NCBI GenBank assembly: GCA_021613535.1
Contig: CP075496.1
Span: forward strand, 8,060,001 to 8,124,000
Direction of reading: 5' to 3'
Length of the DNA stretch: 64,000 nucleotides
Origin: Adineta vaga
Lineage: Eukaryota > Animalia > Rotifera
The position numbers were made by a program, and so were the translations under genes. Positions within the stretch are counted from its first letter, which is position 1. Each line of letters starts with the position of its first letter. Shown here one piece after another: positions 4,601 to 64,000 of this stretch. The notes below the pieces were generated by a model. The model saw nothing but the letters and a program-made list of their open reading frames with translations, had not been told where the DNA came from and ran no database searches.

Positions 4601-7468
4601 TAGCAACTACTTGAAGTTCTCTATTTCAAAGGACCAGAAACCACTGGAATCTTTCGGAAAGTTGCGAATACACGATCAGTTAAAGAATCAATTGAAAAAA
4701 TTGAACGACATATTCTATTACAAAATGATGATTTACATCCCATATTAGCAGCTGGAATCTTTAAGGTATGTATTTTCTATTTAAATATAAAAGAAGATTT
4801 GACTGAATAAATGGCCATAAACATATTTTCTTTTTCTGCTAGGAGTATAAAAGGTAAGAAGAGAGTGAGAAAGCCAAACCCCTCCATGATTTTTTTTATT
4901 CCCGCATGATATTTTGTGTGTAAATTTGTCTGATAATCATTATTTTAGCATTTTTTACGAAATTTACCTGATCCCGTGTTCAATACAATTCAATATGATC
5001 ATTGGAAGAAATGTCTTCGTCTGCCAACCTTACAAGAAAAAGTTACATTTGCAAGAAGAAGGTAAATAAATCAATGAAATTAAATAAAATGCCATGTCTT
5101 TCTTCTTTCAGTATCATTGGTACACTTTTGGAATCAAATCATTTATTATTAAAAGGTTTTATCTGTGTTCTTTATCGTATCTCTCAAAATGCTGATACAA
5201 ATGGAATGAATCCATTCAATTTGGGTTTATGTGTATCAAATAGTTTATTTAAAACTGAATCAACAACTATTACATCAGGCAAACAAGAAGCTGATGTGAT
5301 GTCATCAATTGTTGAATTTTTAATTCTTAATTGTTCATCATTATTTGGTTCAGATATTCTAACATGCATTCCAGACAAACATATTATGGTTCATCAAATA
5401 CCGAGTTTAAGTATGATTTGAAAATATTTTAATCAATATATATTATTTGAATGTAATGATGATTTTTAGCACGACCAGCTGCTTCTTCGATTGAGAGTCT
5501 CGATGAAGTTGAATCTTCACCGCATTTACCTGTTGTCAATCGTTCACGTGATTCAGGTTTAGCGACATCAGATCAACCATTCAATGATGATAGTTCAGAA
5601 ATAAGTGAATATTTTCGACGTCTTACGCCTGTTTCTCCACCTGATTGGACATCATCGGTTGCATGTGGTAGTGGGACTGTTTTAACAAGTATTATTCTTC
5701 CAACAACAACAGCATTATCAATAACACGATGTCGAAATCTAAAGAATACTTATAAACCATCGAAACGTTTTATGGAAAGAGAAAAATTAAAAAATGATAC
5801 AACAGATGATTCGGATCATGATGGATTAAATGGCGATTCTAGTATCCGTTCATCGACAACTACAGTTCATAATATGGCAATCGGAAAAATTAAACGAACA
5901 AAACCGATCTCACGACATTCCTCTTTGGGTAGTAATGAACATCATAATCAACAACAACAGCAACAGCAGCAGCAACAACAAGAAGCATTTATCAAAGAAT
6001 CAAAACGTTTAACAACAACAAATGATGTGAAACGTGCTTCATCATTGAAACAATTTCATCATCTATCTGACGAAGGTGATGATGATGATGAACAAAATAA
6101 ATCTTTACATATAAATAATCATATGAAAAAGAAAGTATCAACATTAGTAAAAAAACATGAACAAATTTTACCTTCGACATCAGCAGTAAATAGTAAAAGT
6201 TTAATTAATGAGCGACGATCAAGATTAGTTAAATCAAAAGCGAAAACGAGTGATGATGAATCGATGACGACAAGGTAAATGATCATATATTTTCTATTCA
6301 TTGTAAATTTATCTTTTCTGGAAAGAATGTAGAAAACTATTCAACTATATCCTATTTGCATATTTTCTTTTTCGATGCTGATCATTAACTTTTAGAAAAG
6401 ATAACTTCATCATTGTTCAAGGAATACAGATCAAACTTTTTGTAGTACGAGACTTTTGGATAGTTTGCAAGAATGAAAAAGATATTTTCCAGTGCTTATT
6501 CTGTGATTAACATTTCAACATTTTTATTTTACAGATTGTAAATAGTTTAAGTACTAAAAGAAAATACGGTATGTAAGGGATGGTTGCTCAGACAAACAAT
6601 CTCTAACGATCGCTATATTAAGACAAAAACTATTGATATTGAATCGAATTATTATTAAAATCGATTAATTTTATATATTTTGTAGAACAACACCTCTCGA
6701 GCAACAAGATTTGGATTTAACAAGTGAACCATTAAGTACAATAAATCAACGTTTGATAAATTCTTCAACAACACGATCAGCCTCATTCTCATTAAATCCA
6801 GCAAATAAAAATTTCGATTCATCTTCAGCTACTCAATCATTACAAGCACCTGTTTTTATAAATTATCCATCTCGAAAAAGACACCCACCACCACACCACC
6901 AACTATCGTTGATGATCGTTCACGACCAAACGGTCCATTGATTGCTACAACAAATCAATTTTATATAACTACTCGAGATGAACATCCCAGTCAAACAAAT
7001 TCCAATACGCAAATAAAAACTGAACGTGATCGAACATTTATTCATCATTCTGATTCTCGTCCATTTAAACTTGGTACAGCCGTACAAATGAAACCAATTG
7101 ATGATTTCATCTTATCATCAGCGAATGGACGTTGTCGTCCATGTCATCGACAAAATGCACTTCGATATAAAACAAATGAACAAGAAACACACACCGATCG
7201 ACCATCACGTTCATCTACACCAGTTATTATCAATCAAAATCGTATATATTCAAGTGAAAATACATCCACAACGATTCCACGTTATCAATCAGTCGAAAGA
7301 CGTATTTCATCAACTCAAAAACATCAACAACCCGTCAAAGCTTTTTCCCTTGATACAAATACTGAACTTCGATCAGCTGATATATCTTGGTCTGTTCGCG
7401 AAAAAGCGAAAATATTTGAACATACTAATCAAACACAATTCTCTACAGGTCGTGAAAATTATGTGTGA
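1620..7468 (+). CDS. ARHGAP20: Multi-exon Rho GTPase-activating protein with PH-like, RA and RhoGAP domains (ARHGAP20-like)
   Basis: PH-like exon (RRLLILTEKNQLIIGK...NFLVEFDTKDIRNTW), RA region ending LIG|HEYPYAIKM, and RhoGAP motifs FFGHVL, KGPETTGIFRK, FLRNLPDP, NGMNPFNLGLC. Poly-Q at 5948-5980 and C-terminal ENYV. Frame break near 6890 (see findings). Confidence 0.85.
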
Positions 7469-8194
7469 TTTATTTCTCCCTCTCTCTCTCTTTATTTGTG
7501 AATTTGTTTTGACAACCGGTGATGTGTGATATATTCGAGTTTTCTCTCATTAATATGTCAAATTTTCTTTGGTTCGCTTCTTCCTAATCTCACGCTCAGG
7601 TGTTCGAGTTCAGCAGCAATAATCTATGTTGTACATATCCTACTTGTCTGTTGTGAGCTTTTATAATTTTCTTTCACGCTTCTTGCGATTTCTTTTCTTA
7701 AATAATAGCGCAAAACTTTCTCGTTTTTTCCTTCTTTCTTTTTCGTTAAAACAACATGGAATTCGTGCATACTTATCATTTCTTATTTTCGTTTCCTTTC
7801 TTTTTCTTTTTTGTTCGACTTAATTGCAACCAAAAAAAAATCATAGAACGGAGAAGTATCTAATGTTGCTTTTTCTTTATGGAGAAACAAAAAATAAGTA
7901 AAAGATCTTTTTTTTATTGTTTATGTGCATATCTATATATAATAGCAGAGAAATTGAACATTGTTGTTTGTAGATATGATCAAAAATGAATGTATGATAC
8001 CGTTATTGATATGTTATGCTGCATCGTTGATGAGTTTTCAGTTTGAATGTATTGAAGTGATTCACTAGTTTGCACGAGTAAGCTAGATTAATGGATCGTT
8101 TCGCTAAACATTTCATGGCTTCAATAGAGAAAATTCAAATGGATTTGCTAATGAAAAGAATAATTGCGCTAATTTTTTCTCTTTTCTTCGAATT

Positions 8195-8749
8195 ATGCAT
8201 TATTATCGTGCACAACCATTATCTACCTTAGATCAAGCATTTCATGAAGCTCGATTACAAATTCATCGAATGCCTATTGAAATTCTTCAAAGATTAAACA
8301 CGGATTCAACTGAATTATCTCACTTCATTCAAACATTACCAACGATTCGAACTTTCGAAAACCAATGTCAACAATTGATCGAACATACTCAGCAGTTAGC
8401 AAAGAATAATCTGAAAAGAGAACCTGAATTGTTATTTAAACGTCAGAAATTATCTAATACGTTTGCTGAATTAGAAGTATTACGTGACCAATATCTGAAA
8501 TATCAATCAACAGTACAGGATGAGAGTTCTTCGCCAACGTTGATTTTAGCTCAACTTCAATCGACCGTTCATTTCTATGAACGATCAAATGATGAAATGA
8601 TCGATACATTTCTACATACTTCTCATAAAGATCATGATATAGATCTGTTTGTGAAGAAATTTCTTCAAGATCGACAAAAAACTATCGAACTTCGTTGTAA
8701 AACAGACAAATTTTTTGATTTATATGAACGTGAAAAACAAAAGAAATGA
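8195..8749 (+). CDS. VPS37: ESCRT-I subunit VPS37-like (Mod(r) domain), intronless
   Basis: 184-aa helical ORF with LAKNNLKREPEL, LAQLQSTVH...EMIDTFL and DIDLFVKKFLQDRQK, matching the Mod_r/VPS37 C-terminal pattern. Confidence 0.75.
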   Translation: MHYYRAQPLSTLDQAFHEARLQIHRMPIEILQRLNTDSTELSHFIQTLPTIRTFENQCQQLIEHTQQLAKNNLKREPELLFKRQKLSNTFAELEVLRDQYLKYQSTVQDESSSPTLILAQLQSTVHFYERSNDEMIDTFLHTSHKDHDIDLFVKKFLQDRQKTIELRCKTDKFFDLYEREKQKK

Positions 8750-8784
8750 ACGCTTTTTTTCTGGTTTCAGATAAATTCTTTTCG

Positions 8785-11700
8785 ATGGCTTCAGGTATTC
8801 AACAGGTACGATAAAAGAGGAAAAACTAGAAACGAAATTATTTCTTTTTCCGATTATCTAGTGGCGACGATTTACTTTTTTTGATAAGGAAATTGTCAAA
8901 CGAAAAGATGGCAAAGCTTTAGAAGATTTTAAAGTAAATAAATCGAAGAAAACAGACTTTAAAGAAGGAATTCTATCAATTTTATTTAGAAAATTAAAGT
9001 TATCGCATCGACTAGTACTAATGGTGCTGGCGATGGTCAATTGATATTTGGTTGTGATGATGGATCGTTATGTGTTTTAAATCGTGATTATGAAGCGAAT
9101 CATATTCATTCATTTGATACGTCACTAGATTTATTAGCACATTCAGTTGGTGATACATTGATTGCCATTGGAGTAAGAAGAAAGATTTTGAATGAAAGAG
9201 ATAGAACAACAAATGAACGATGTCCTGTAATTCTTTTCAGATGGATGTCAATGAAACAAAACAAACGATCAAAATTTGGAAAACAGATAAAGTTAGTTGG
9301 ATTTTATTGAAAGAAGAAATCTTTCATCAATTTCGAAATTTCTAGCCACTTGTGGAAAAAGAAAATACTGAACCAGCTAAAATTATTTCAGTTTTGCCAA
9401 ATGAACATCCAAATTCAAAAGTATATCTTGTGTTTCGTTTTAATAAGAAAAAAATTATTTATTATTTTCATTAGATATGTGCAGTAGCTATTACCGATCG
9501 TCATATAGCACTTGGTTGTCTAAATGGAGCTATCTATTTTTTTGGATCGAACGATTTAATTAAAGAAAAGTATGTCTTGATTCAGATAGGTTCATTCGTT
9601 GTTGTCATAACTTTTAAATTTCATCTCTTCTCATAGTTTTTCAACTTCAATTGAAGATATTCTTCTTAATCTAAAGAAATCTATACATTTATTTTGTTTT
9701 GCTTTCGTAGACGTTACAAATTTTCACCACCATTCTATCAAGCTGAAAGTCCTATAACTAGTCTAGCTTTTGCTGAAGAAAACAAACAATTTTCTGATTT
9801 AATTCTCTATGCGACAACTGAATCAACTGTAGTTTCTTTTCGTTTGGTGCAAACAACACCCCCAGTTGGTATATCAGCGGCTGTTGCTGTTGCTAATTCT
9901 GTATCATCGACTTTAACATCGACATTACGCGATCGTCGACCATTTCACATAACTGCTCATCAACAACCAGTAGCACAATTTAAGACAACAAATCTTGAAA
10001 CCTCGATTGGTTGTGCTCCAGGTTGTGCTGTTTTAGCACAATCAGAATTAGATGATGAACAACAATTTGTAATCGCCAATTCTTTAGGCGTCTTTTCATA
10101 TGTGAGAGATGATAAGCGTCTTGGTTTAGCAATTGAAGGTGAAAAATCAGCTGTACATTGGTGGTTCAATTATTTAATAACAGTAACAAAAGGAAATTCC
10201 AAATCAGTCTCTATGAATAAAACAAAACTACAATCGAATATTCTTTCACAATTAACAGCAAAGTAAATTTCTATATCCAAATTTTTCTTTCGATGTTCTG
10301 TTCTGTTCTTCTCATTTAATTTAGTCAGACAACAACAGAATTACAAACATTAGCTGTTTATGATACAAATCCACAATTAACAGCCTATTCAATTGGAATG
10401 GCAAGTATACAATGTGTATTAAATGAATGGGGTTACATACATATATTAACCGGTGATGGAGATTTGCATCGTTTGATTGAAAGAGATTTACATTCAAGAT
10501 TACGGTTACTATTCAGAACAAATTGTTATCAATTAGCACTTCAGTCAGTTATTTAAATTCAAAATACGATCATGTTCATCAATATTTGCTTTAATACGAT
10601 TTAGATTAGCGAAAAAGAATCGAACCAGTAAAGAAGGTATGGCAGAAATTTTCAAACAATTTGGTGATTATCTATATGGGTAAATAATGTTAATCTTTTA
10701 TCTTTTGAATGAGTTCATTTCAATGTGTATTTTCTGCATTGTCTTCTTTTTATCGAATAGAAAAAATGAATATGAAACTGCAACTGATCAATATTGTAAA
10801 ACGATTGGCTTTTTAGAACCATCCTATGTTATAAAAAAAGTAAATCCTCCTTTAATTCAATGTTAATATTAAACAAATCAATTTGATTCTTATAGTTTCT
10901 TGATTCTCAACATATCGATCATTTAACTCGATATTTAGAAGAATTACATCGCGAAAAATTAGCTAATGTTGATCATACAACTTTACTCCTCAATTGTTAT
11001 ACAAAACATCCTGATCGAATCAATCGTTTAGCTCAATTCATTGGTTTAAATGAAATTTCGTCATCAACAGCTGATGTCGATTTAACTTTCGATGTTGATA
11101 TAGCTATTGATGTTTGCCGTCAAGCTAGTTTGTATTCTCAATCATCATTCATTTCGAATAATTCGTTTTTGCTTCATATCTATTTCAGATTATTTGGATG
11201 AAGCATTAGCTCTTTCAGCTAAATATCGTCGTCATGATAAATATATTAAAATACAATGTGAAAATAAGAAAGATTATGATAAAGCATTAACATATATTCA
11301 AACATTAAAATTTGATGATGCTCTACAAGCATTTCGAAATTATGGAAAGACTTTAATTCGAGAACAACCAAAATTAACAACAAAATTATTAAAACAATTA
11401 AATCCAACACCACAACAAATTGAACAAGAACAATTACCTGAATCATTGATTAATCTATTTATGAATAATCCAGATGAATTACTTGATTATTTAGAATATG
11501 CTGTTAAGGTAGAATTATTTATATTTTGTAGATATCGAAGATTTTTATTTTTATTTTTAGCAATATCCAAGTGAACATCTGGGATCCAGTGTTTATGATA
11601 CAATTTTAGAATTACTTTTACAAAAATATAGTAAAATACAAGATATAAAAGAACGTGATCGATTAAGTCAACAAATTTTAAGTTTATTACAAAATCCCAA

Positions 11701-13140
11701 GGTAAATTTTTATCAAATATGATCGAATGAACAAACTGTAGAAACAGATTTGCATTAGAATGGAATTGTGATATGATTCTATTCAATAGAAATAGACAAC
11801 GTTTTTGAGGGTGTATTTCTATTGAAACACAACACTGATAATAAAGACATTATAACCCCATTCGATAGATCTTCTTTGAATTGATTAGGAGATGAACGCT
11901 ATATTCCACATTTAATCTCAAAATTTGTAAGCAATTATTTGAAATTTAGATTGGTATTGATGTGACACGTGCCATGGTTGTATGTCAAAAATATAATTTC
12001 AAACCAGGTGTGATTTGTTTATATGATAAAGCTAGATTGTAAGAGAATTCTTCAATGATGAAAAAAGCAAATTTAATATTGAGATATTGTTTAATTTCGA
12101 TTAGATATCAACAAATTTTACAATATCAAATGGAAAATAAAGATGATGATGAAATTGTTGCTACTTGTCGTAAATATGGTGATGAAGATCCTCAATTATG
12201 GATTCAAGCTTTAAGTTATTTTTCGAAATTAAAACGTGCCGATGGTTGTCGAAAAGAAATTCAACAAATTTTAAAATGTTCGTTGAATATTTCTATAAAA
12301 ACGACAATTGATTATGTTTTCTTTGTTTTTTTGATTCTCGGTAGATATTGATGAGAAAGATCTTCTATCGCCTTTATTAGTTATTCAAACATTGAGTAAT
12401 AATGAATCAACTAGTCTAGATTTACTTAAAGTAAGTTTAATTTTCGATATAAATTTATATTTGAATTTCATTGTTAAGGATTATTTAATTCGTAAACTTC
12501 GTACTGAACAAGAACAAATTGAAAAAGATCAAACAGAAGTTCGTCGTTTTCGTCAAGAAAGTGAATTTTATGTGCAAAAAATCAAACAATTAGAAACTGA
12601 GTTTGTTGAATTCAATATCTTTTTCTAATCATTGAATTCTTTCTTGTAATTTTAGTCCGATTCTTTGTCAAGATCCAAAATGTAGTGCATGTAAAATGGA
12701 CTTAGATATTCCATGTGTTCATTTCTTTTGTGAACATTCTTTTCATGAACAGTCAGTTGTTTTGCAATGAATTCAATTCTTCTTGGAGATACAAATTTTA
12801 TTCATTTCTTTAGTTGTGCCTATGCTGTTGAGTCACCAAATTCAACCGAGATTACCTATGAATGTCCATTATGTTCCGGTGATAATCGGTAAGTAGATAA
12901 CTAAGAAATACTATTCAATCGAATGATAAATTTTGACGTTTTGTTTAGTAAATGGCTTGGTTTGATAAATAGTCAACGAGCAGATAAAGATATTCATGAA
13001 ACATTTCATCGAGAATTAGATAGTCATCAAGATAAATTTGGTGTTATTGCTGAATTTCTCGGTCATCGACTTTTCGACAAAGTAACGTCGATCTTTTTTT
13101 TCGATAAAAATAAAAATGTATTTTTCTTTCTTAGGAATAA
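8785..13140 (+). CDS. VPS11: Vacuolar protein sorting 11 (CORVET/HOPS core subunit), multi-exon
   Basis: MASGIQQ|WRRFTFFDK start, FKQFGDYLY, KTIGFLEPSYVIKK|FLDSQ, HTTLLLNCYTK, RING CSACKMDLDIPCVHFFCEHSFHE, end KFGVIAEFLGHRLFDK|E*. Confidence 0.95.
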
Positions 13141-40266: not shown

Positions 40267-41596
40267 TCAGTGTTTATTTACATATTCTTTTTTGCCCCAT
40301 AATGGTGTATCTTCTGTAGTATTTAAATTCAATGAAAATTCAGTTTGTAATGTAATTTCATCAGCGAAATCCTGATGAACTTTGTTACTTTCATATATAT
40401 TCGATGAGAGAGTCAAAGCATCAAGTGCAACTTTAACTAAAGCATTCAGACGTTGTACTGCTTGAAAGAAATCATATTTGTATAGCATATATCTCCATAG
40501 AAGTTCGACATAAACATTTTGACTACCAAATAAACGAAATGTACCGCATAACAAACTATCTTGAGATGCTAGTTGTTCTGTAGTAACCATATAACAATTC
40601 GATGAAAAAGTCAATATAGTAAGCATTAATTTTACAAGTGTCAAATCATAATCAAGTAATGTACTAATATATTTTGTACGCTGAACATTATCAAAACCAT
40701 ATAGAGGTATTAGAGCATTTTCGCTATATCTATTATAAAATATACCAGCTTCACGAAATGAAGTTACGCAATAGAATGCTAATAAGCCTTGCATATTCCG
40801 TTGAAATAATGAAGATTGTTCTTCACTTGTCATTACACGAAAATCAGCAATACACTCAATAAATGATTGTAACGATATATAAATTATAGTCATAATATTC
40901 AAGGAATTTCTTATATCGTGTTCTTTATTTGGAAATGTATTATCGACTAGTTTCACAATGTCTTTCGTAATTGGTACGCAACTGTAAGTATCAAAAGCGT
41001 GAACAATATTTGAAAGTAATCTCCAATTCGTTGATGTCAGAATTGACCGATCAGTGGATAAGAGATCTAATGAACATGGTTGTGAGAAAGTCTAAATATG
41101 AAAAGTTTTGTTTTCTTATCTTTTTTTCTGAAGAATAATCTTATTTTCTAAAGGTATAATTATACATACGACGAATTCTTTTGATGCTAATTGTCTTTGA
41201 CATTTCTTTGAACTTCGATATTTTTCATAGAAATCTTCTTTACGAATTAAATCTGACCTCATTCCTATTGCCAAGCATTTTTTTAAACGACATGCAGTAC
41301 AATATTTTCTTGTTCCAATCGTTATTGGACAAAATCCTTGATAAGAACAAGTTAACATATTCTAGGAGACGAAAACTGCTATATAAGGATAGAAGTATAG
41401 AATTATGAATAGAAGAAACCTTAGAATGGAACCCATGTCGACGAAAGAATGTACGACATGACGAACATGAAAGTGCGCCATAGTTAATTATACGTGCGTG
41501 ATCACCGCAAACTGAACAAATTCCAACATTTGCCGATTGATGATGTCTTCGAATAGATCGAGTTGACGAAACCGATAATGGTCGTTTAAACGACAT
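40267..41596 (-). CDS. Nuclear receptor A (divergent NR1-like, HR96/VDR-type), 3 exons
   Basis: CSVCGDHARIINYGALSCSSCRTFFRR, CSYQGFCPITIGTRKYCTACRLKKCLAIGM, LBD IADFRVMTSEEQSSLF...EDTPLWGKK. Confidence 0.92.
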
Positions 41597-42809
41597 TTTA
41601 ATCGATTGATTTTGATTTTCTTATCTGAAATTGTAAAACAGTTGTTTTCCAGAAAATAATACTACAGAACCAGAATGATATTAACGTAGTTTATAATATG
41701 ACTCTTAGAATGAGTAGGTGTTCTATGATACGTTAGAGGTTGTTTCCGTAATGATATATTTTAAATATAAACGGACACATTTTGTACTAATCATGACAAT
41801 CTCTTTGGAATAAAAAAACACATCGATCTTAAATAAAAATGAAATACTATTCGTCGTACCGTATTTGGACTGTCTAATGAGGATACGGTGTGTCTAGATG
41901 TCCTAAGTATCTTTTTTTTCATATTTTAAAGTAACAAACAGATAATAAGACTTAATCTACTTACGTATCGAACATAAAAGAACGTGTGATGCAATAGCAT
42001 CATGCATAGATCGATGTTTTTATTTTCTTGTCTCCTCTATCTTTTTTTATTTTGCTTTGTTGTTCTCTAGTTACATCCTTTTATTTATTCTCACTCGTTC
42101 ATTCTACAAGAAATGTCAACCAGTAGATAGCTGAAAAAGCGACTTCTCTCTTCTCATTAATGCGAACATAAAAAAAGAAAAATAGAGCAAAACATTCATT
42201 TACAACAAGTATGTGTCTTCATAAGACGAACAGTCTCAATAAGATTTTTTTCTAGAATGAAATAATAGAGCGAAATTAAGATTTCATTAGAAAAATCTGC
42301 GAGATAAAAATGTATCTAATTGATTAGTCTATCTTTCTTGATCTTTGAGTTGAATATACGAAAATATCTCGTCTGAAATTCATGAGATCTTAGATAAAAA
42401 TGGGTTTTGTCACAAGTTTTAATTGAAGATAGAACTTGGAAAACAATTTATCTTGATTGTATTGTCAAAAAAAAAACGCCAGATGAATGATAAGAAAAGA
42501 AAATTAATTACAAAAACTGACTACAGTAAATCCGTTTAACTTCTTTTTTTCGTTCTGTCTCTCCTTCTATCGTGCTATGTTTAGATAAGTATCTTTTAAA
42601 CATGCTCTGGATAGATTATCTTATCAGTAAGTCGTTAGAATATCGCACAACAGGTTATTTATTTTAGACAATATTGATAACAAGAAGAATACTGACAAAA
42701 ATATACAAACAGCTGGAATGTCAATAAAATTTATTTTAACATTTTTGTTTGTTTTGATCGTTCAGTAATATCTATTGATTAAACATAAATTTCATATCAC
42801 ATGTTGAAA

Positions 42810-45222
42810 TCATGTTCGACCCCACAAAACAATGACTTCATCATTATGTTTTGTCAATGAATTTTCCGCTAATTCAGCAGATTCTTCAATAAAATCATGG
42901 TAAAGATCATTTGTTCGATGAATATCTGCAGATATTTGTAAAAGATCAAGTATAGTTTTAACAATTAAAAGCAAACGCATTCCTGCAGTATAATAATCAT
43001 AGCGATAAATCATATATTTCCATAGGATTTCAATATACATATTTTGACTTCCTAATAATCGAAATGTTCCTAATAGTAATCTATCTGGTTGAATATGTTC
43101 ATGTTCATCAACCATGAAACAATTCGAAGAAAAAGCTAAGATGATAAGCATAAATTTGATAACTATTACATCATCTTCAAGTTTCATGATTATATTTTTC
43201 ATTCGATGATAAATATTATATTCATAAGTATTTGTTAGGATACTTTCATTACTTGAAATATTGAACATTCCTGTCATAGATAAAATGAATGTTGCGTATA
43301 GATTAAGTACTCCATGAAGATTTCGTTGATAGAGAGATTGTTTCTCTGCAAGAGTTAATGTTTGAAAATCAGCCGACGATGAAATAAATGAGTCAGTTGA
43401 TGAATAGAATTGACTGAAGAGAGACAGAACTTGTGAAATATCGAAGGAGAGATGTTGTGGCCAAGTAGTTAGATGTTGAGTAAGTTGTCGTGTTTGAGAA
43501 GCTGGAGTAAATTTGTCGAAGGCATGAATAACATTGGAAAGCATTGTCCAATCGAATGGAGTGAGAGATGATTGATCTTGACGAAGAAGATTCAATGTTG
43601 GTAAGTGAACTACAGGCTATGAGAAGAAATAAAATATTACTATCGAAGAATATTTTCTCATAAGCATATATACGTCTAGAAATAGTTCACTAATATAAGC
43701 ATCGTGTTTATTCATTTGTCCAAAGAACACTTCTTTGTGCTGATTACTTACAATAACAATATAGAGTACTTGAACATATTAGATTAGTATTTTTCTAATA
43801 AAGAAATATTTAAGATAACTCTGAACTCTATGATGAGATCTTACATAATTTTCAAATGAAGTCAGTTCTCATCTAAACCGTATGTACTCATACATGTAGT
43901 TACTTAAAACATATTTTATATATATATATTTGCAACATTAAAAAGCAGAAAATTTTCTTTTCTTTGTGTAAATAATTAGTAGATTGTACTTAAATAATCT
44001 CGTGGAAGTTTATCATAAGGTCTCACATAAAAGAATCTTCTTAAAACGCTAGTATTTTTGCCCTGCTATTACAGTATGAACTGAGCTTTATATTTTATCA
44101 TGAAAAAAATTTAATCTTCACTGTATAATTCAGAGAGATTATTGATCTTATGACAGATGATGTTTATTTTATCATTGAAATTAACTTCGGCAAAAAAGTG
44201 TACTCTCGGGAAGATATATATATATAGAAGAAAGAGGAAACTGGTCTGTTTGTAAAGAAGTCGGCGTTTTTATTACAAATTTCATAGAAAAAAAAGGAAG
44301 ACAAAAGTATTTTGACTACACGCCTCTTGACAAACGCAAAAGACGTAATCAATTTGTTTGATGGAGATCGACATAGACAGTTAACCGATTTGGAAAAACC
44401 GTCGTTTGAACTATATTTTTGGTTTAATAAAATGTATTTACTTTGTCAACTGTGAAGACATAATTATGGAGATGATGATGATGGTGACTTCTTCAAAGAT
44501 TAGAAACAGACTATTTGATAAGAATCTAAAAGATTCGTGTCGAAAAATTTTCAACAGACAAGCACAGTTGGTGATCTAGCAATTAGAATCCTATGTCATG
44601 ACTATTTCTACCGAAGTAAAGAAGAAAAAGGAAGATCTAAATTCATCTTTATTATTTGTGCACAAAAAGATATGCATTATCTCATCGACATTGTTGATAA
44701 AATTCATATATTGTTTTTCATTCTATATATAATAGAAAAAACATTTCGGTGTTACACTTTCTTTGTAATAATATCTCATCTAATATGACAATAATAAAAA
44801 AACATACCATAGTCTTTTTCAATGTCATTTGTTTATATTTCATTGAATGTCCTTGTCGATTTTTTGAAGACAAATCTTCTTTACGAATAAAATCTGAATT
44901 CATTCCAGCTGCTAAACATTTCGCAAAACGACAAGCTGAACAATATTTCCTGGTCTCTGTCGTTATGAAACATTCAGCTTCGAAATGACATTCTAAATTC
45001 TATTAAATATACTTGTAGAAATAAGTATGCAGGTGTAAATACAAATATTCATACTTTTGAATGATAACCATGTCGACGAAAGAATGTTTTACAAGATGGA
45101 CAACTAAGTGCTCCATAATTTATAATACACGCTTTATCTCCACATACTTGACAAGTGTCATTTCGAGATGGAATCCTAGCAGATTGATCTGTTATTGGAA
45201 GAATTGTTTTTTTTAAAGACAT
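42810..45222 (-). CDS. Nuclear receptor B (tandem paralog), with a 1.2-kb second intron
   Basis: CQVCGDKACIINYGALSCPSCKTFFRR, CHFEAECFITTETRKYCSACRFAKCLAAGM, LBD ADFQTLTLAEKQSLY...VIVLWGRT. Confidence 0.92.
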
Positions 45223-45662
45223 TTCTTTTCTAATATAGTAAAAACAATAATCTAAACAATATTATTCGAGAGATGAGAGATGTATCGCAGATTGTCTGCA
45301 AAAATATTCAAAAGATCAAGATGATATTTTACAAAAATAATGCAGATTATAAATTGAAAGTATGTATATGTAAAAACGTCATTATAATAAATAAAATATG
45401 GTACAGAAAAGGATGCCTAGCAAAAGTGCTGTAAGTGAATAATATCTTTTGTCTAGAAAATGATAAACTAAAAAAGAAAAACAAGTCTATTTATATTTTC
45501 TCTTTCCTAGTTGTCTATTATCACCTCGTGCATACTCAAATGTTTTATCCACCCTTCAAAATGCGTGAGCGACTATATCTAGAGAAAAATACATTACTTT
45601 TCCATTTCTTTCTCTACAATAAAAACAAGTTATAATGACGAGAGAAGAGAATAGAAAAGAAA

Positions 45663-45686
45663 GTGAGTGAGTGAGTGAGTGAGTGA
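45663..45686 (+). repeat. (GTGA)n tetranucleotide microsatellite upstream of NR-B
   Basis: gtgagtgagtgagtgagtgagtga read directly. Confidence 0.8.
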
Positions 45687-46483
45687 GAGAGAGAAAGAGA
45701 AACGTTAATCACTAAAGCTTCTGATTAGTCATTTCATTATTATACGTATGTTATCATTATAATGTGCTATATCTCAAAGATAATTAATTTAAAAAGTATT
45801 CGATTATGTACAGATGCCTTTTCAAATGACTTTGTATATGTAAACTAAATTATTAAATACTAACGTCATTGAACATAGAGATATGAGAACATCTTGTGTT
45901 CCATGAAGTAACTGTATATCATTGAAACATAATCATGTTTACATAATACTTATTTTGCTAAAGATAAAACAAAATGATGAATTTATTATTTACAAATCTT
46001 ATTATAGTGAATCAAAGGCAGAATTCTTGTCAGTTTTAATTAACATTTAGTAATTGATTTATGGAAGAGTTAATAATATAGGAGTTTTATGCACTGTACA
46101 AAGATTAGATCTACGTTACATCCGAGTTCATATGTTTATCTACTGCAAAGAAATAAACAAGATATAAATGTTTGCAAGTTTATTTTTACGTGTTCTTTAA
46201 GTGTATAAAATCCTTTGAGAATTAATTGACAATAACTACACACAAGGAAAACATCACTTACATGTTTAACTATAGAATATCAAAATACTCCCACAGTCTA
46301 AGTGATGGGTTTATCTGTTTTTTGTTAATCTCTACTTGTTTAACTAAATATACATGCCAATTTCTGGCAATTTAACGTAGGCATAGAATTTCATTCTCAT
46401 AATTAATCAAATATTCGAAGAAACATCTATTTATATAACAGATATGAAGTATTGTCACTATGCTCGACCCCATAAAATAACCA

Positions 46484-46649
46484 CTTCATTCCGAAAGGCA
46501 TGATAGCGAAAGAATATCTTACAAGATACGTACGCCATTCCAACATAATTAAGACAACTCGCTGAATATCCACATACTTGACAAACACGCATCTTTGATG
46601 GTATACTTGATTTTTACTAATGGAACTCAAGTTGATAAAGAGCAGACAT
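46484..46649 (-). pseudogene. Orphan degenerate nuclear receptor first zinc-finger exon
   Basis: A minus frame reads MRVCQVCGYSASCLNYVGMAYVSCKIFFRYHAFRNE (third Cys lost). The upstream ATG frame hits TAG, and no matching second finger or LBD follows. Confidence 0.7.
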
Positions 46650-47405
46650 TTATAAATCTTAGTAGTTTATACCGGAGTACTTTCACTTCAATAGACTTAA
46701 TTCATGAATAAATACGAGGATTCCTTGAAAAAATCATGAGTTTATTAAAATCAGATAAAAATTAATTGTACCTGTAGTTGCAAATAATGAATATTATAAA
46801 AACAGCTCTTTAAAGCAATTATTTACACTATATAATATTTAAAAAAGAACTAATTAAACCACTATTTCTACGTGTCAATACTTTCAAGATACTCAATTCC
46901 TAGTCCACATTTTTCAAATTTGTACTTTAGTCTATTGATACTTGTCATATAATATTATTATTTTATATTTATTTTCTACTAACATCTTGGAAATATTTAT
47001 GACAATATTTTAGAAGACTTTTTCTCATCTTGTTCATTTAGCTATTTAGATGATTGTCTATTAAATGAAAGGTAGAGAACAAAAGATGATGGAATGATGT
47101 TCTTCCACGAAACATACAGTAGAAATGTTCTTGTTTCCTTTGATACTTATCAGGAATGAAATAGTTGATATTCTCGTTCATAGTTATTCAATGAATTTAT
47201 TCACAGTTCTAAAGTATATCAGTAGTTCGGAATTCTAACAAAAGAACACACCCTTAAAGTTTCTATTATTCGTTTATCTTTATTGATCAATTCGTGTTCA
47301 TTTAAGACAATCATTATATACATAAGTAAATAAATGAATACAATTTTCAATAATCTAATTGCGTACATCATAAAAAAAGAAAACAAAATCATATAAATCA
47401 AACTA

Positions 47406-48738
47406 TTATTTCTTTCCCCATAATGGTATAGAATTATTGTCTGTTCCACTCAATGATCTTTGAATTTGTCCAATTGTATGATCAATAAAATTTTGATGAA
47501 GTCGATTATTTTCATACATTTCAAATGAAAATCTCAACACATCAAGGAATTGTTTAACAACTGTAGAAAATCGTTGAACTGAATATTCATGACCATATGT
47601 ATGCAATAAGTATTTCCACAATAATTCAATGTATACATTTTGACTTCCGAATAAACGAAATGTTCCTAATAATAAACTATCACGGTCAATATCTGTGCCA
47701 TTATTTAACATAGAACAATTCGATGAAAATGCTAATGCTACAAGTAGAAGTTTAAAAACGATTGGATCACAATTTAATTGTTGACAAATTAATTTTGCTT
47801 GTTGAAAAACATCATTGCCATAGAATGGTGAGATCATCATTTCATTTTCAGGTCTATCAAAAACACCTAGTTCACGCATGAAATACATTCCACCAATACA
47901 TAATAGACCGAACATATTACGTTGAAATAATGAAGATTGTTCTGTGGTTGTTAATATCCGAAAATCAGGTATAGAACTAATAAATGATTGTAAAGATTTA
48001 TAGAATGATGACATGAGATGAAATGATGGTGGCACACCATATGGTAATACTATCGATGATGATGATGATGATGATGATGATATTGTAGTACTCATGGTCA
48101 TTGTTTGACGAACTTCTGAAACTGGATTGAATGTATCAAATGCATGGATAACATTAGATATCACTTTCCAATCAGAGGGATTGAGTGTGAAATGACCAGC
48201 GCCATAAGATAAATTTAATGCTGATTGTTCAGGTATAGTCTAAAATACATCAAATATCCAAGATAAAAGCAAGTCTATCGATTTGAAGAAAAAAATATAG
48301 ATTAATATATCCAATTATATCTTTAAAAAAGCTTCTCACTTACCACCACATCCAATTGTTTACTCTTCACTTTTTGTGATTTCTCTTTTTTCTTTGATAA
48401 ATCTTGTTTTCGAATGTGATCAGGATTCATACCTATAGCAAGACATTTGGTAAGTCGACATGCTGCACAAACTTTTCTTGTTAACATATTCACTTCACAA
48501 TGTCCATCATAACGACATGTAATTGGTTTCTGTGAAAAGAAATGTGAATTTAAAAACGAAAATTTCATAGATTTCATACTTTAGATGGAAAACCATTTCG
48601 ACGAAAAAATGTTCGACATGATGAACAAGATATAGCACCATAGTTCATTTTTGGCGAATGATCTTCACACACTAGACATAGATTCATCGTAATGGTAGTT
48701 TGTTTTTTCTCTTGATTATGATCATTCGATGAAGCCAT
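47406..48738 (-). CDS. Nuclear receptor C (tandem paralog), 3 exons
   Basis: CLVCEDHSPKMNYGAISCSSCRTFFRR, CRYDGHCEVNMLTRKVCAACRLTKCLAIGM, LBD IPDFRILTTTEQSSLF...SIPLWGKK. Confidence 0.92.
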
Positions 48739-50652: not shown

Positions 50653-51217
50653 TTAACGACGATAATAAACAGTTTGATAATTTGACCAAAGAAGTCCAGC
50701 ATTGATTATATATGTTGCAATACAAACTAGACATAAATCTTTGAGAATAAAAGCTAAGATAAAAGCTAAATAGAGTGAACCAACACAAGCTAATACAGAT
50801 GAGAATAGAGCGAATTTGGTAAATAGTGGAATTGGTATTAATCCTAAAATAGAATGAAAATAATGAGACATATAGATGACAAATAAAAAGGATTTTGTTT
50901 TTTACCAAAAAGAATTTGTAAACTATAGAAAATAATACCCAAATTACCATTTGATGCATTCAATTTACTATTTTTACCAAATAAAGTACCAGCAATTCCA
51001 AATCCAGTTCCATATCTATCAACAAAATTACTTTTAATTGATCAATTGAACTGATTTGATCTTACTTGCTGGTTAAAACTTTAGTACAACTTGCATTTGG
51101 CCCTATATCGCACATTGCTTTATATTTTGGATTCTTCTCATGTTGTTTTTTGACGTAAAATGAATATAAAGATGCAATAATACCTGCAATACCTAATAGA
51201 ACTTGTTCAACGATCAT
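50653..51217 (-). CDS. VKORC1: Vitamin K epoxide reductase complex subunit 1-like, 3 exons
   Basis: ASLYSFYVK...YKAMCDIGPNASCTKVLTSK|YGTGFG...NASNG...GSLYLAFILAFILKDLCLVCIATYIIN (CxxC active site). Confidence 0.93.
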
Positions 51218-51514
51218 AGTTTTTATTTATCTACAAAAAGCAACGAAGAACTAAGAAAAATAACTTTGATACTTAATTCTCTTCATAGGCACCCGATACA
51301 TATACATACATTGTAGAATAAATAAATTTTGAAAGACACCAAAAAAACCAGAACAATAGAAAATCAAGAAACAAAACACAAGAAAATAGGGAACATATCT
51401 GACTGAAAAATAAAACAAATTTTTTCACACATTGAAAGACATCCAGCAAAATAGAAGAAAAGAATGTTGTTACTGTGAGCATAGATTCAATTAAAATGGT
51501 GAATTATTGAGCAT

Positions 51515-59321: not shown

Positions 59322-60590
59322 ATGACATCAGGTAAAAAAGAATGTTGCTTTAAGTTTTTATCCACAAATGAAATTCTTTTACTCATTTTGCAATAGACAC
59401 GTCATTATGGATGAAATTTCTTCTCGAATCAGATTTAACAGCTGATCAGAATACTCTTTTACAATATAGTACAGCATTATCCAAACGATTCAAGACAATT
59501 GACAAACTTTTACGTGTTGATGAGAATGAATTGACTGATCTTGGTATAACAAATCAATACGATCGAAATTGTTTAATTCGACAAGCTCATCTATTAGATG
59601 ATAAAGTAATAAATATTCAAATTATATTTTTCAAGAATCTATTTTTGATTTTATTCAGGAAAATTTACCATTAATTAGGCAATCAACAAGTATGTATATA
59701 CTATAAACCGAAAAACAAACTAATTATTCATTACTAATTTTAGTTTCAAATTATGCAAATGAACATTGGCTTAGTAATAATCAATCAACACCAGTCGATC
59801 CACAATCTAAATGTAATCTATCTCCAGCATTACTCTCTCGAATATCGTTTAATGATCGTTAGTAGACTATTTTCTTTACTTAGCTATTCATTGAATGATG
59901 CATTTCTTTTAGATGCTTCATGTGATGAAGTCACACTTATCAATCCAAATATTTCCAGTGAACATTTTTACACACCAAAACGTGTCGATCATAATGAAAA
60001 ACTTCAAACATTAATCGAATCTGGTCAACAACTTACATCACCTACATCAACTCGTGGTATGCGAATGATCAAATCGATTTCGAGTAACTTGATTTGTTTG
60101 TTTGTCATGATCATTAAGAAAGTCTATTGAATATTCGATTAGATTCAATAGCTTTACAAAAGAAAGTTCTTGTTGGTAATGATCGTTTGAAACGACTTAC
60201 TTTACCACGATCATTAATTAAACGACAGACAGCATTACTTACACAAAAAGTATCGAATCTAACCAATAAACTTATAAATCCATTTGCAAAGAAAAACAAT
60301 AAAAACGATTTGAAATTACATGGAAATACAGACAAACAAAATCGAGAAGTTAAAGAATGCAATGAATATCAAAAAGTAGAAGTTTCAGATCGTAATAATC
60401 TACTAACACATCTCGCTGAAATTGAATCCAAACGTACAGGTAGATACGAAAATCGATATACTATTGATAGTTACATTTTTTGATCGTTTTAGTTTCATCT
60501 ACTCAAACATTTCCTAGCCGAAAATTTAAACTTGGTGCACCAACAAAGTTTCTCACACGTTCACTTGCTAATCATGGTGTTAAAGAATGA
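59322..60590 (+). CDS. Protein with an N-terminal SAM-like domain and a low-complexity basic tail
   Basis: MTS|DTSLWMKFLLES...YSTALSKRFKTIDKLLRVDENELTDLGITNQYDRNCLIRQAH is SAM-like. In-phase short introns lead to a stop at 60588-60590. Confidence 0.6.
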
Positions 60591-60717
60591 AAACTTTCTC
60601 CTTTTATTTCATAGTATATTTAAATCTTTCAGTCTTTCATAAATAATTTGTAATACTTATATTTTTTTTTCTTCTCAAACAGTCAGATTTTTTCTTCTAG
60701 ATTTAAATATTTTCTAA

Positions 60718-62589
<1,872 letters not shown>

Positions 62590-62851
62590 AATTATTGTTT
62601 TGTTTTTTATACCTTTTTTTTCAATCTATCTATCCATGAACATTAAAAAATCAAAAAAATTGTTTGATTAAATATATACATATATCAATAATCGTTACTC
62701 CGAATAACGATTTTATTCATGACGAAAAATACCATTCTTTTGCAAAATGCTTATCATTACACACGTGTATATTTCATCCTTTTCTCCTATCAACAACACT
62801 AACTTTCTAATCGCATGTTGTGTGTCATCATTCTATTTACTTTTGTATAGT

Positions 62852-64000
62852 ATGTCGTTTCATATAACAATTATTGGTGGTGGTATTATCGGTTTGACGA
62901 CTGCCTGTACTTTATTGAAAGAATATTCATCAAATTCACATTTACAATTAGTTATCATTAGTGAAACGTTTTCACCCGAAACAACAGCTGATATTTCGGC
63001 AGGCTATTGGGAACCTTATGGACTTGAAACTATCGACGAACGAACACTTCGTTGGGCTGGATATACATATGATATATATGTTAGTGAATTTTTTTCTACA
63101 AAAGCAGCTCGAGCTGGAATTATGAAAATGCCTGCATATACATTATACGGTTTCAATGGTCAGAGTAGAGGTAAAAATATGCTTAAACCAACGTTTTCAA
63201 CACTAGTTCGACATTTCCGAATGTTAAATGAACATGAAATGGGAATGTTTGATCATTTAAATCCAACTTCTGGCTTTGTTATGTCAACAATAGCTGTCGA
63301 AGTTCGTTATTATCTACATGAATTACGTCGTTTTCTCTCACAAGATTCACGTGTGAAATTTATTCATAAGAAAATTTCATCTTTTCACGAATTAAACAAT
63401 CAAACAAATCTAATTGTTAATTGTACTGGTATAGGAGCACGACAACTTGCTAATGATCTAACCGTTCGACCTGCACGTGGACAAGTAATTTGACATTATT
63501 CGTTAATAAACTATTGAAAAATATTTCAATATTTAGGTAATTCGTATTCATGCACCATGGATAAAAGCTGCTTATAATTTTGATACAGATGAAGGTGAAG
63601 GATATATTATACCTCAAGCAAATTGCGTTGTTCTAGGTGGTACATTTCAATTGAATGATTGGAATACGACAATTGTTAAAAGTGATACAAAGAAAATTCT
63701 TCGTATGTGTGCGAAATGTTTACCAGCATTAGAACAAGTTCATCATGGTAAAGTTCAAGTCGGCCTTCGACCTTATCGAGATGATGGTGTACGACTTGAA
63801 CATGAGAAAACAAGTAATGGTATGGATATTATACATTGTTATGGACATTCTGGTTCAGGTGTTACTCTTGCTTGGGGTTGTGCAAGAGATGTTGTGGAAA
63901 TTATGAAAACAATTTTACCCGTTGCTGAATTACAACAATCAGAAAATGAAATACCATTACATGAACAATTATGGCGTTTAGTAGAAAATAAAAATAGTAA
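62852..64000 (+). CDS. D-amino-acid / D-aspartate oxidase family flavoprotein, open to the window end
   Basis: ITIIGGGIIG FAD motif, IVNCTGIGA, PARGQ|V, VLGGT, VGLRPYR, IHCYGHSGSGVTLAWGCA. Confidence 0.92.

What the first reader, a model, noticed from the sequence alone, without database searches (positions are those of the whole stretch)
8195..8805. VPS37 and VPS11 are 35 bp apart: candidate zero-spacer endolysosomal operon
Seen: the VPS37 TGA (8747-8749) is followed by CGCTTTTTTTCTGGTTTCAG|ATAAATTCTTTTCG and the VPS11 ATG at 8785. There is no room for a promoter or a normal 3' UTR. The only poly(A)-like hexamer, AATGAA (8745-8750), overlaps the stop, so cleavage would fall near the AG at 8770. 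Known: SL trans-splicing occurs in bdelloid rotifers, and nematode SL1-type operons have coincident 3'-end and trans-splice sites. VPS37 (ESCRT-I) and VPS11 (CORVET/HOPS) act in the same endosome-to-lysosome pathway. Inference: one pre-mRNA yields both proteins. Alternatively, VPS37 is an intronless gene inside a VPS11 5'-UTR intron (possible donor GTAAGC at about 8078).
Basis: partly seen in the sequence, partly recalled or inferred. Interest (0 to 1): 0.8.

Follow-up and report, generated by a model that had tools for sequence, protein, structure and literature searches.

The report
Candidate spliced-leader operon, bdelloid rotifer
In a bdelloid rotifer, VPS11 starts 35 bases after the VPS37 stop, behind a splice acceptor kept across bdelloids even where VPS37 has decayed; this looks like an operon cut up by spliced-leader trans-splicing, but no RNA test could be run.

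Summary
Observation confirmed: intronless VPS37 (8195-8749, Mod_r) ends 35 bp before the 21-exon VPS11 (8785-13140). The spacer is a pyrimidine tract plus TTTCAG (8765-8770). The genome (Adineta vaga by its shape) has 42 SL RNA gene copies. In 17 bdelloid loci an AG|A acceptor lies 7-21 nt before the VPS11 ATG. It is TTTCAG in 12 of 17, against 8 of 183 VPS11 cis-intron acceptors. Where VPS37 is intact the spacer is 31-40 bp. [quoted passage not shown] So the lasting neighbour is RhoGAP, VPS11 there needs no promoter inside VPS37, and the 'endolysosomal' link is weak. Best reading (0.65): VPS11 is SL trans-spliced from a precursor that runs through VPS37, possibly from RhoGAP. This scan already noted many similar candidates elsewhere in this genome; I found no paper describing rotifer operons.

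The parts
6809..7468 (+). Last coding stretch of the upstream RhoGAP gene (ARHGAP20-like: RHG20_PH + RhoGAP); candidate first gene of the unit
   Evidence: Pfam on its exons; same gene upstream in L014, L028, L056, L016, L042, L045-L047, L049; L050 by stop and UTR homology
7469..7956 (+). RhoGAP 3' UTR with several conserved blocks (inferred UTR)
   Evidence: alignment A4; the first blocks are shared with the C1 ohnolog
7957..7976 (+). Conserved 20-nt block ending TTTGTAG|ATA, preceded by AATAAA in most lineages (ATTGAA here). Candidate RhoGAP 3' end plus acceptor; also holds GTTTGT, a donor-like hexamer
   Evidence: exact pattern match in 24 loci, unique in the genome, absent from the ohnolog that lost VPS37/VPS11
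8078..8083 (+).
   Evidence: upstream alignment; no GTAAGY between RhoGAP and VPS37 in A. ricciae
8166..8194 (+). GCGC core plus T-tract before the VPS37 ATG, no AG; possible internal promoter or start site (inference)
   Evidence: GCGC core kept 20-50 nt before the ATG in most VPS37-intact loci; the A. steineri locus L056 reads GCGCG
8195..8749 (+). Intronless VPS37 paralog, 184 aa, Mod_r domain; single copy, about 30% identical to the intron-containing VPS37 ohnolog pair on C2/C5
8745..8750 (+). AATGAA overlapping the stop (AATAAA or ATTAAA in relatives); candidate poly(A) signal
   Evidence: missing in L024, L025, L049
8753..8770 (+). Pyrimidine tract and TTTCAG acceptor; candidate SL trans-splice site 8770/8771
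   Evidence: AG|A in 17/17 loci, TTTCAG 12/17 against 8/183 cis acceptors
8771..8784 (+). 14-nt VPS11 5' UTR after the acceptor (inferred)
   Evidence: 7-21 nt in other loci
8785..13140 (+). VPS11, 21 exons, 964 aa, single copy in the genome
   Evidence: A. ricciae model 965 aa

Best explanation
VPS11 is a downstream gene of a polycistronic unit. Polymerase transcribes through VPS37 into VPS11; the 23-nt rotifer spliced leader is joined at TTTCAG 8770/8771, giving a capped VPS11 mRNA with a 14-nt UTR after the leader. VPS37 mRNA gets its 3' end at or near the same AG, by cleavage about 20 nt after the stop-overlapping hexamer or by the trans-splicing cut itself, as in Ciona and C. elegans SL1-type operons. 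The precursor starts either just before VPS37 (GCGC/T-tract) or at the RhoGAP promoter. Shown: layout, conservation, acceptor class, SL genes, dispensability of VPS37. Inferred: SL addition, co-transcription, position of the 3' end, position of the promoter.
For: Spacer 31-40 bp in A. vaga, A. ricciae, A. steineri and six metagenome lineages. Acceptor AG|A in 17/17 loci, 7-21 nt before the ATG; TTTCAG 12/17 and CAG 13/17, against 8/183 and 25/183 at VPS11 cis introns of the same loci. 42 SL exon copies in the genome, those read followed by GGTAAA; over half of bdelloid transcripts carry the SL (PMC1925144). Where VPS37 is decayed (L044, L046) or gone (L042, L043, L045, L047, L050) the acceptor stays and VPS11 has no stops, dN/dS 0.13-0.37; it then lies 88-147 nt behind the RhoGAP block (L042, L045, L050), a typical operon spacing. 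In L047 AATAAA, 17 nt, TTTCAG, then the VPS11 ATG close the RhoGAP UTR directly.
Against: An unpaired acceptor shows splicing, not co-transcription. The hexamer is mostly dictated by codon plus stop, is absent in 7/17 loci, and 3 of 20 cis acceptors in the window have such a hexamer within 30 nt (counted). The 17 loci are related, so the counts are not independent. An invariant GTTTGT upstream could act as a cis donor.
Confidence: 0.65

Rival explanations
1. VPS37 is an intronless gene nested in a VPS11 5' UTR intron. VPS11 starts in or near the RhoGAP 3' UTR, and a cis intron runs from a donor in the conserved block (GTTTGT, 7966-7971) to the AG at 8770.
For: GTTTGT is invariant wherever the block exists and is the donor of two VPS11 introns here. 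Block-to-acceptor distance in VPS37-less loci (88-147 nt) is intron-sized. The block is lost in the ohnolog with VPS11. Flatworm acceptors are often shared by cis- and trans-splicing (PMC12582326).
Against: The acceptor differs from this gene's cis acceptors. L047 keeps the acceptor without the block. The upstream exon would hold conserved ATGs and needs a promoter inside the RhoGAP 3' UTR.
Confidence: 0.15
2. VPS11 is SL trans-spliced but monocistronic: it has its own promoter inside the VPS37 ORF, and the outron merely overlaps VPS37's end.
For: Most SL-spliced genes in tunicates and nematodes are monocistronic (established knowledge; PMC1488885 gives about 50% trans-spliced genes but about 352 operons). 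Explains the acceptor equally well.
Against: The ORF has been eroded or deleted in several lineages with VPS11 intact, and the remaining 88-147 nt share no motif. This speaks for those lineages, not directly for A. vaga.
Confidence: 0.15
3. Two ordinary genes packed tightly: VPS11 has a capped start in the end of VPS37, no splicing at 8770, and the VPS37 3' UTR overlaps the first VPS11 exons (for example ending after AATAAA at 8937).
For: Compact genome; AATAAA hexamers occur in VPS11 introns 1-2 of several loci.
Against: Does not explain an invariant AG|A with a pyrimidine tract in non-coding DNA across lineages whose synonymous sites are near saturation (dS about 0.9-1.0).
Confidence: 0.05

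Closest known systems
Ciona intestinalis operons without intercistronic DNA (PMC1488885)
   Same: Same-strand neighbours under 100 nt apart, one SL type, acceptor expected to abut the upstream 3' end.
   Different: Most Ciona upstream genes (16/18) lack AATAAA; here 10/17 loci have such a hexamer. In Ciona SL addition and 3' ends were mapped; here not.
C. elegans / C. briggsae SL1-type operons (PMC9258526, PMC12582326; Williams 1999 as cited there, not held)
   Same: No intercistronic region; poly(A) signal just upstream of the trans-splice site; TTTCAG acceptor.
   Different: No SL1/SL2 distinction known in rotifers; here the upstream 3' UTR would be only about 21 nt; coincidence of 3' end and splice site untested.
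Oikopleura (23-30 nt spacers), chaetognath and flatworm operons (PMC1488885, PMC12460157, PMC12582326)
   Same: Housekeeping genes packed within 250-300 bp on one strand in an animal with SL trans-splicing.
   Different: Described and read-validated there; for rotifers operons are listed as not determined (PMC2481426) and the A. vaga genome paper does not mention them (PMC8494291).
Bdelloid SL trans-splicing (Pouchkina-Stantcheva and Tunnacliffe 2005, as cited in PMC1925144 and PMC3795323)
   Same: The same 23-nt leader; its genes are in this genome.
   Different: As cited, it concerns leader addition, not polycistron resolution.

Membership tests
SL-resolved operon | Same-strand genes very close together | tested here: met
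   35 bp here, 31-40 bp in relatives
SL-resolved operon | Organism has SL RNA genes | tested here: met
   42 copies with a GT donor after the leader in those read
SL-resolved operon | 3' splice acceptor before the downstream ATG | tested here: met
   17/17 loci
SL-resolved operon | That acceptor has no cis donor | tested here: inconclusive
   GTAAGC not conserved; GTTTGT in the block is invariant except in L047
SL-resolved operon | SL joined to the downstream mRNA | not testable with these tools
SL-resolved operon | One promoter, polycistronic precursor | not testable with these tools
   only indirect: VPS11 survives loss of the VPS37 ORF
Zero-spacer (SL1-type / Ciona-type) operon | Upstream poly(A) site abuts the trans-splice site | tested here: inconclusive
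   hexamer 13-22 nt before the AG end in 10/17 loci, partly forced by codon plus stop; no 3'-end reads
VPS37 (Mod_r) family | PF07200 above cut-off | tested here: met
   71.5 bits against 30.1
VPS11 family | N-terminal propeller, clathrin-type repeat, C-terminal domain | tested here: met
   PF23341, PF23266, PF23356 on window exons; PF12451 on the homologous exon in relatives
Retrogene | Intronless copy of an intron-containing parent; poly(A) remnant and target duplication | tested here: inconclusive
   intronless against three introns in the C5 paralog, but only about 30% identity; no insertion marks recognisable

The most novel reading that the evidence does not exclude
A three-gene rotifer operon RhoGAP > VPS37 > VPS11 with two zero-spacer joints (poly(A) signal, 14-20 nt, AG|AT), in which the middle gene is an old retrocopy that has been lost repeatedly while the joints stayed. 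It would be a natural deletion series showing how genes enter and leave an animal operon, in a phylum with no described operons.
Probability: 0.3. Interest if true: 0.7.

Novelty: new member of a known kind. Interest (0 to 1): 0.45.

Why it matters
Operons are not described for rotifers in the papers I could search, although bdelloids trans-splice over half of their mRNAs and one monogonont EST survey found no leader. A conserved 35-bp joint is a compact test case for an open question raised in Ciona: whether one precursor can yield both mRNAs when the 3' end and the trans-splice site coincide. The lineages that lost VPS37 give natural controls. As one of many such candidates in this genome, the locus adds a case, not a new principle.

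Tried and rejected
It did not call the stretch human-like. The script machine was lost: the acceptor weight-matrix score, the Fisher test and the GCGC map were not run; spacer and hexamer counts were made by hand from earlier outputs. The spliced VPS11 model was searched exon by exon by reference only; the joined search (and any SL-plus-exon pattern) was left out. Exons were put together only inside scripts, to check the frame and to build a tree, and were not printed or searched. The big protein search was not used: both proteins were identified, and I make no claim of absence in Rotaria or monogononts (not tested). No transcript contig turned up among metagenome, ENA or Logan hits. Rfam found nothing in the window. 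Williams 1999 and Pouchkina-Stantcheva 2005 are not held. Rejected: GTAAGC as a conserved donor; a VPS37-VPS11 fusion protein (stop conserved in all intact loci); a conserved acceptor right before the VPS37 ATG (none); pathway co-regulation as the reason for linkage (VPS37 lost repeatedly, other VPS37 paralogs on C2/C5).

Full report
Observation. The sequence is as described. An intronless 184-codon ORF at 8195-8749 ends with TGA at 8747-8749; 35 bp later VPS11 starts at 8785. The ORF is a Mod_r/VPS37 protein and the exons behind it are VPS11. Twenty GT-AG introns give a 964-codon open frame ending at 13140. The spacer is a T-rich tract, TTTCAG (8765-8770) and 14 nt. TTTCAGAT is expected about 0.002 times in such a spacer. 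The genome has 100.8 Mb in six contigs, with paralogy between contigs 1/4 and 2/5; this matches the Adineta vaga assembly (PMC8494291), an inference from shape.

Trans-splicing machinery. The rotifer leader taken from PMC3795323 matches 42 places in the genome and the reversed control none; all copies read are followed by GGTAAA, so they are SL RNA genes. PMC1925144 reports the leader on more than half of bdelloid transcripts.

Conservation of the joint. VPS37 followed by VPS11 was found in A. ricciae, A. steineri and six metagenome lineages. The spacer is 31-40 bp. A scan with VPS11 exon 3 added more loci. Over 17 non-redundant loci, an AG followed by A lies 7-21 nt before the VPS11 ATG in all; it is TTTCAG in 12, CTTCAG in 1, TTTTAG in 3, TTTAAG in 1 (counted by hand). 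The cis introns of VPS11 in the same loci end in TTTCAG only 8 of 183 times and in CAG 25 of 183. The site is therefore a constrained acceptor of a stricter kind than the gene's cis acceptors. The loci are related, so this is not 17 independent trials, but synonymous divergence across the set reaches about 1.0.

VPS37 is dispensable at this place. VPS37 is broken by frameshifts and deletions in L044 and L046, has a premature stop in L049 (a long-read error is possible), and is absent in L042, L043, L045, L047 and L050. L042 and L043 keep a few bases that resemble its last codons. On an unrooted VPS11 tree the intact loci fall in two well-supported groups with decayed or empty loci between them, which points to repeated loss; some loci may be ohnologs, and gain versus loss at L047 cannot be told without a root. 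VPS11 in the empty loci has no stops and dN/dS of 0.13-0.37, so it is in use. It sits 88, 111 and 147 nt behind the RhoGAP 3' block in L042, L045 and L050, and these remnants share no motif. In L047 the RhoGAP UTR runs straight into AATAAA, 17 nt, TTTCAG and the VPS11 start, at the same distance from the RhoGAP stop (about 500 nt) as the block in the window. So the lasting order is RhoGAP then VPS11. This argues against a needed promoter in the VPS37 ORF and against pathway co-regulation as the cause of linkage.

The upstream block. A 20-nt block at 7957-7976 is nearly invariant and unique in the genome. It follows AATAAA in most lineages and ends in TTTGTAG|AT, the same layout as the VPS37/VPS11 joint. 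The RhoGAP ohnolog on contig 1 has lost VPS37, VPS11 and this block but kept the earlier UTR blocks. It may be the RhoGAP 3' end fused to an acceptor. Against SL addition there, an ATG usually follows at once and the VPS37 start is 90-300 nt away. The block also contains GTTTGT, a donor used by two VPS11 introns, so a cis intron over VPS37 remains possible. A GCGC core with a T-tract is kept before the VPS37 ATG and is missing from L042, L045 and L050, which lack VPS37; an internal promoter is a guess.

The 3' end of VPS37. AATAAA, ATTAAA or AATGAA overlaps the stop in the Adineta-side loci and is missing in L024, L025 and L049; over all 17 loci such a hexamer lies shortly before the acceptor in 10. 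Three of 20 cis acceptors in the window have one within 30 nt. Since a last codon ending in AA plus TAA supplies five of six letters, the signal is weak. Zero spacing is plausible, about even odds within the operon reading.

Origin of this VPS37. It is single copy and intronless, about 30% identical to an ohnolog pair on contigs 2 and 5, of which the contig 5 copy has three introns. An old retrocopy is likely but not shown.

Mechanism. Most likely (0.65) a precursor runs through VPS37 into VPS11, the leader is joined at 8770/8771, and VPS37 mRNA ends at or near the same AG. PMC1488885 notes that in such joints one molecule may give only one of the two mRNAs, so 'one pre-mRNA yields both proteins' may hold for the unit but not for each molecule. 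Rivals: nested gene in a cis intron (0.15), monocistronic SL gene with a promoter in VPS37 (0.15), plain overlap (0.05).

What was not tested.

Comparison and verdict. It works like a Ciona or SL1-type operon; membership is unproven because SL addition and co-transcription were not testable. Searches of the held literature found no description of rotifer operons ('not determined' in PMC2481426), though PMC12460157 names rotifers in a general sentence on trans-splicing and operons. This scan has noted many similar candidates elsewhere in this genome; these are unchecked notes and were not used as support. New member of a known kind; interest 0.45.

Noticed in passing
window 51217-51260 (- strand): VKOR gene (PF07884) starts at 51217 behind TTTTTGTAG|AT, 13 nt before the ATG, right after the 3' end of a GH47 (EDEM-like) gene; one frame puts that stop only 33 bp upstream (frame not verified). 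Another candidate tight joint.
   Followed up: partly
window 60590-60740 and 62590-62853 (+): An unnamed gene, a Sir2-family gene and a DAO-family gene follow head to tail about 150 and 160-260 bp apart, with pyrimidine-AG sites before the starts; candidate operon.
   Followed up: no
L015:5580-7130 (A. steineri, GCA_905250035.1): A copy with the upstream block, VPS37 and only the first VPS11 exons, next to a separin gene and without RhoGAP; other A. steineri assemblies have the full locus. Partial duplication or assembly join.
   Followed up: partly
G000:C1:5057052-5060531 (L053): Ohnolog region: RhoGAP faces the LDL-repeat gene directly; VPS37 and VPS11 are both gone.
   Followed up: yes
L030-L041: Many SL RNA genes stand as divergent pairs about 130 bp apart, clustered on contigs 2 and 5; the genomic base before the leader is T, not G.
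   Followed up: no
L016, L020: VPS11 intron 2 is precisely missing in these two related loci.
   Followed up: no
window 7516-7612: RhoGAP 3' UTR holds short blocks invariant across all lineages and the ohnolog; function unknown.
   Followed up: no
window 40267-48164 (- strand): Several ORFs that look like nuclear receptor exons in tandem; not checked.
   Followed up: no
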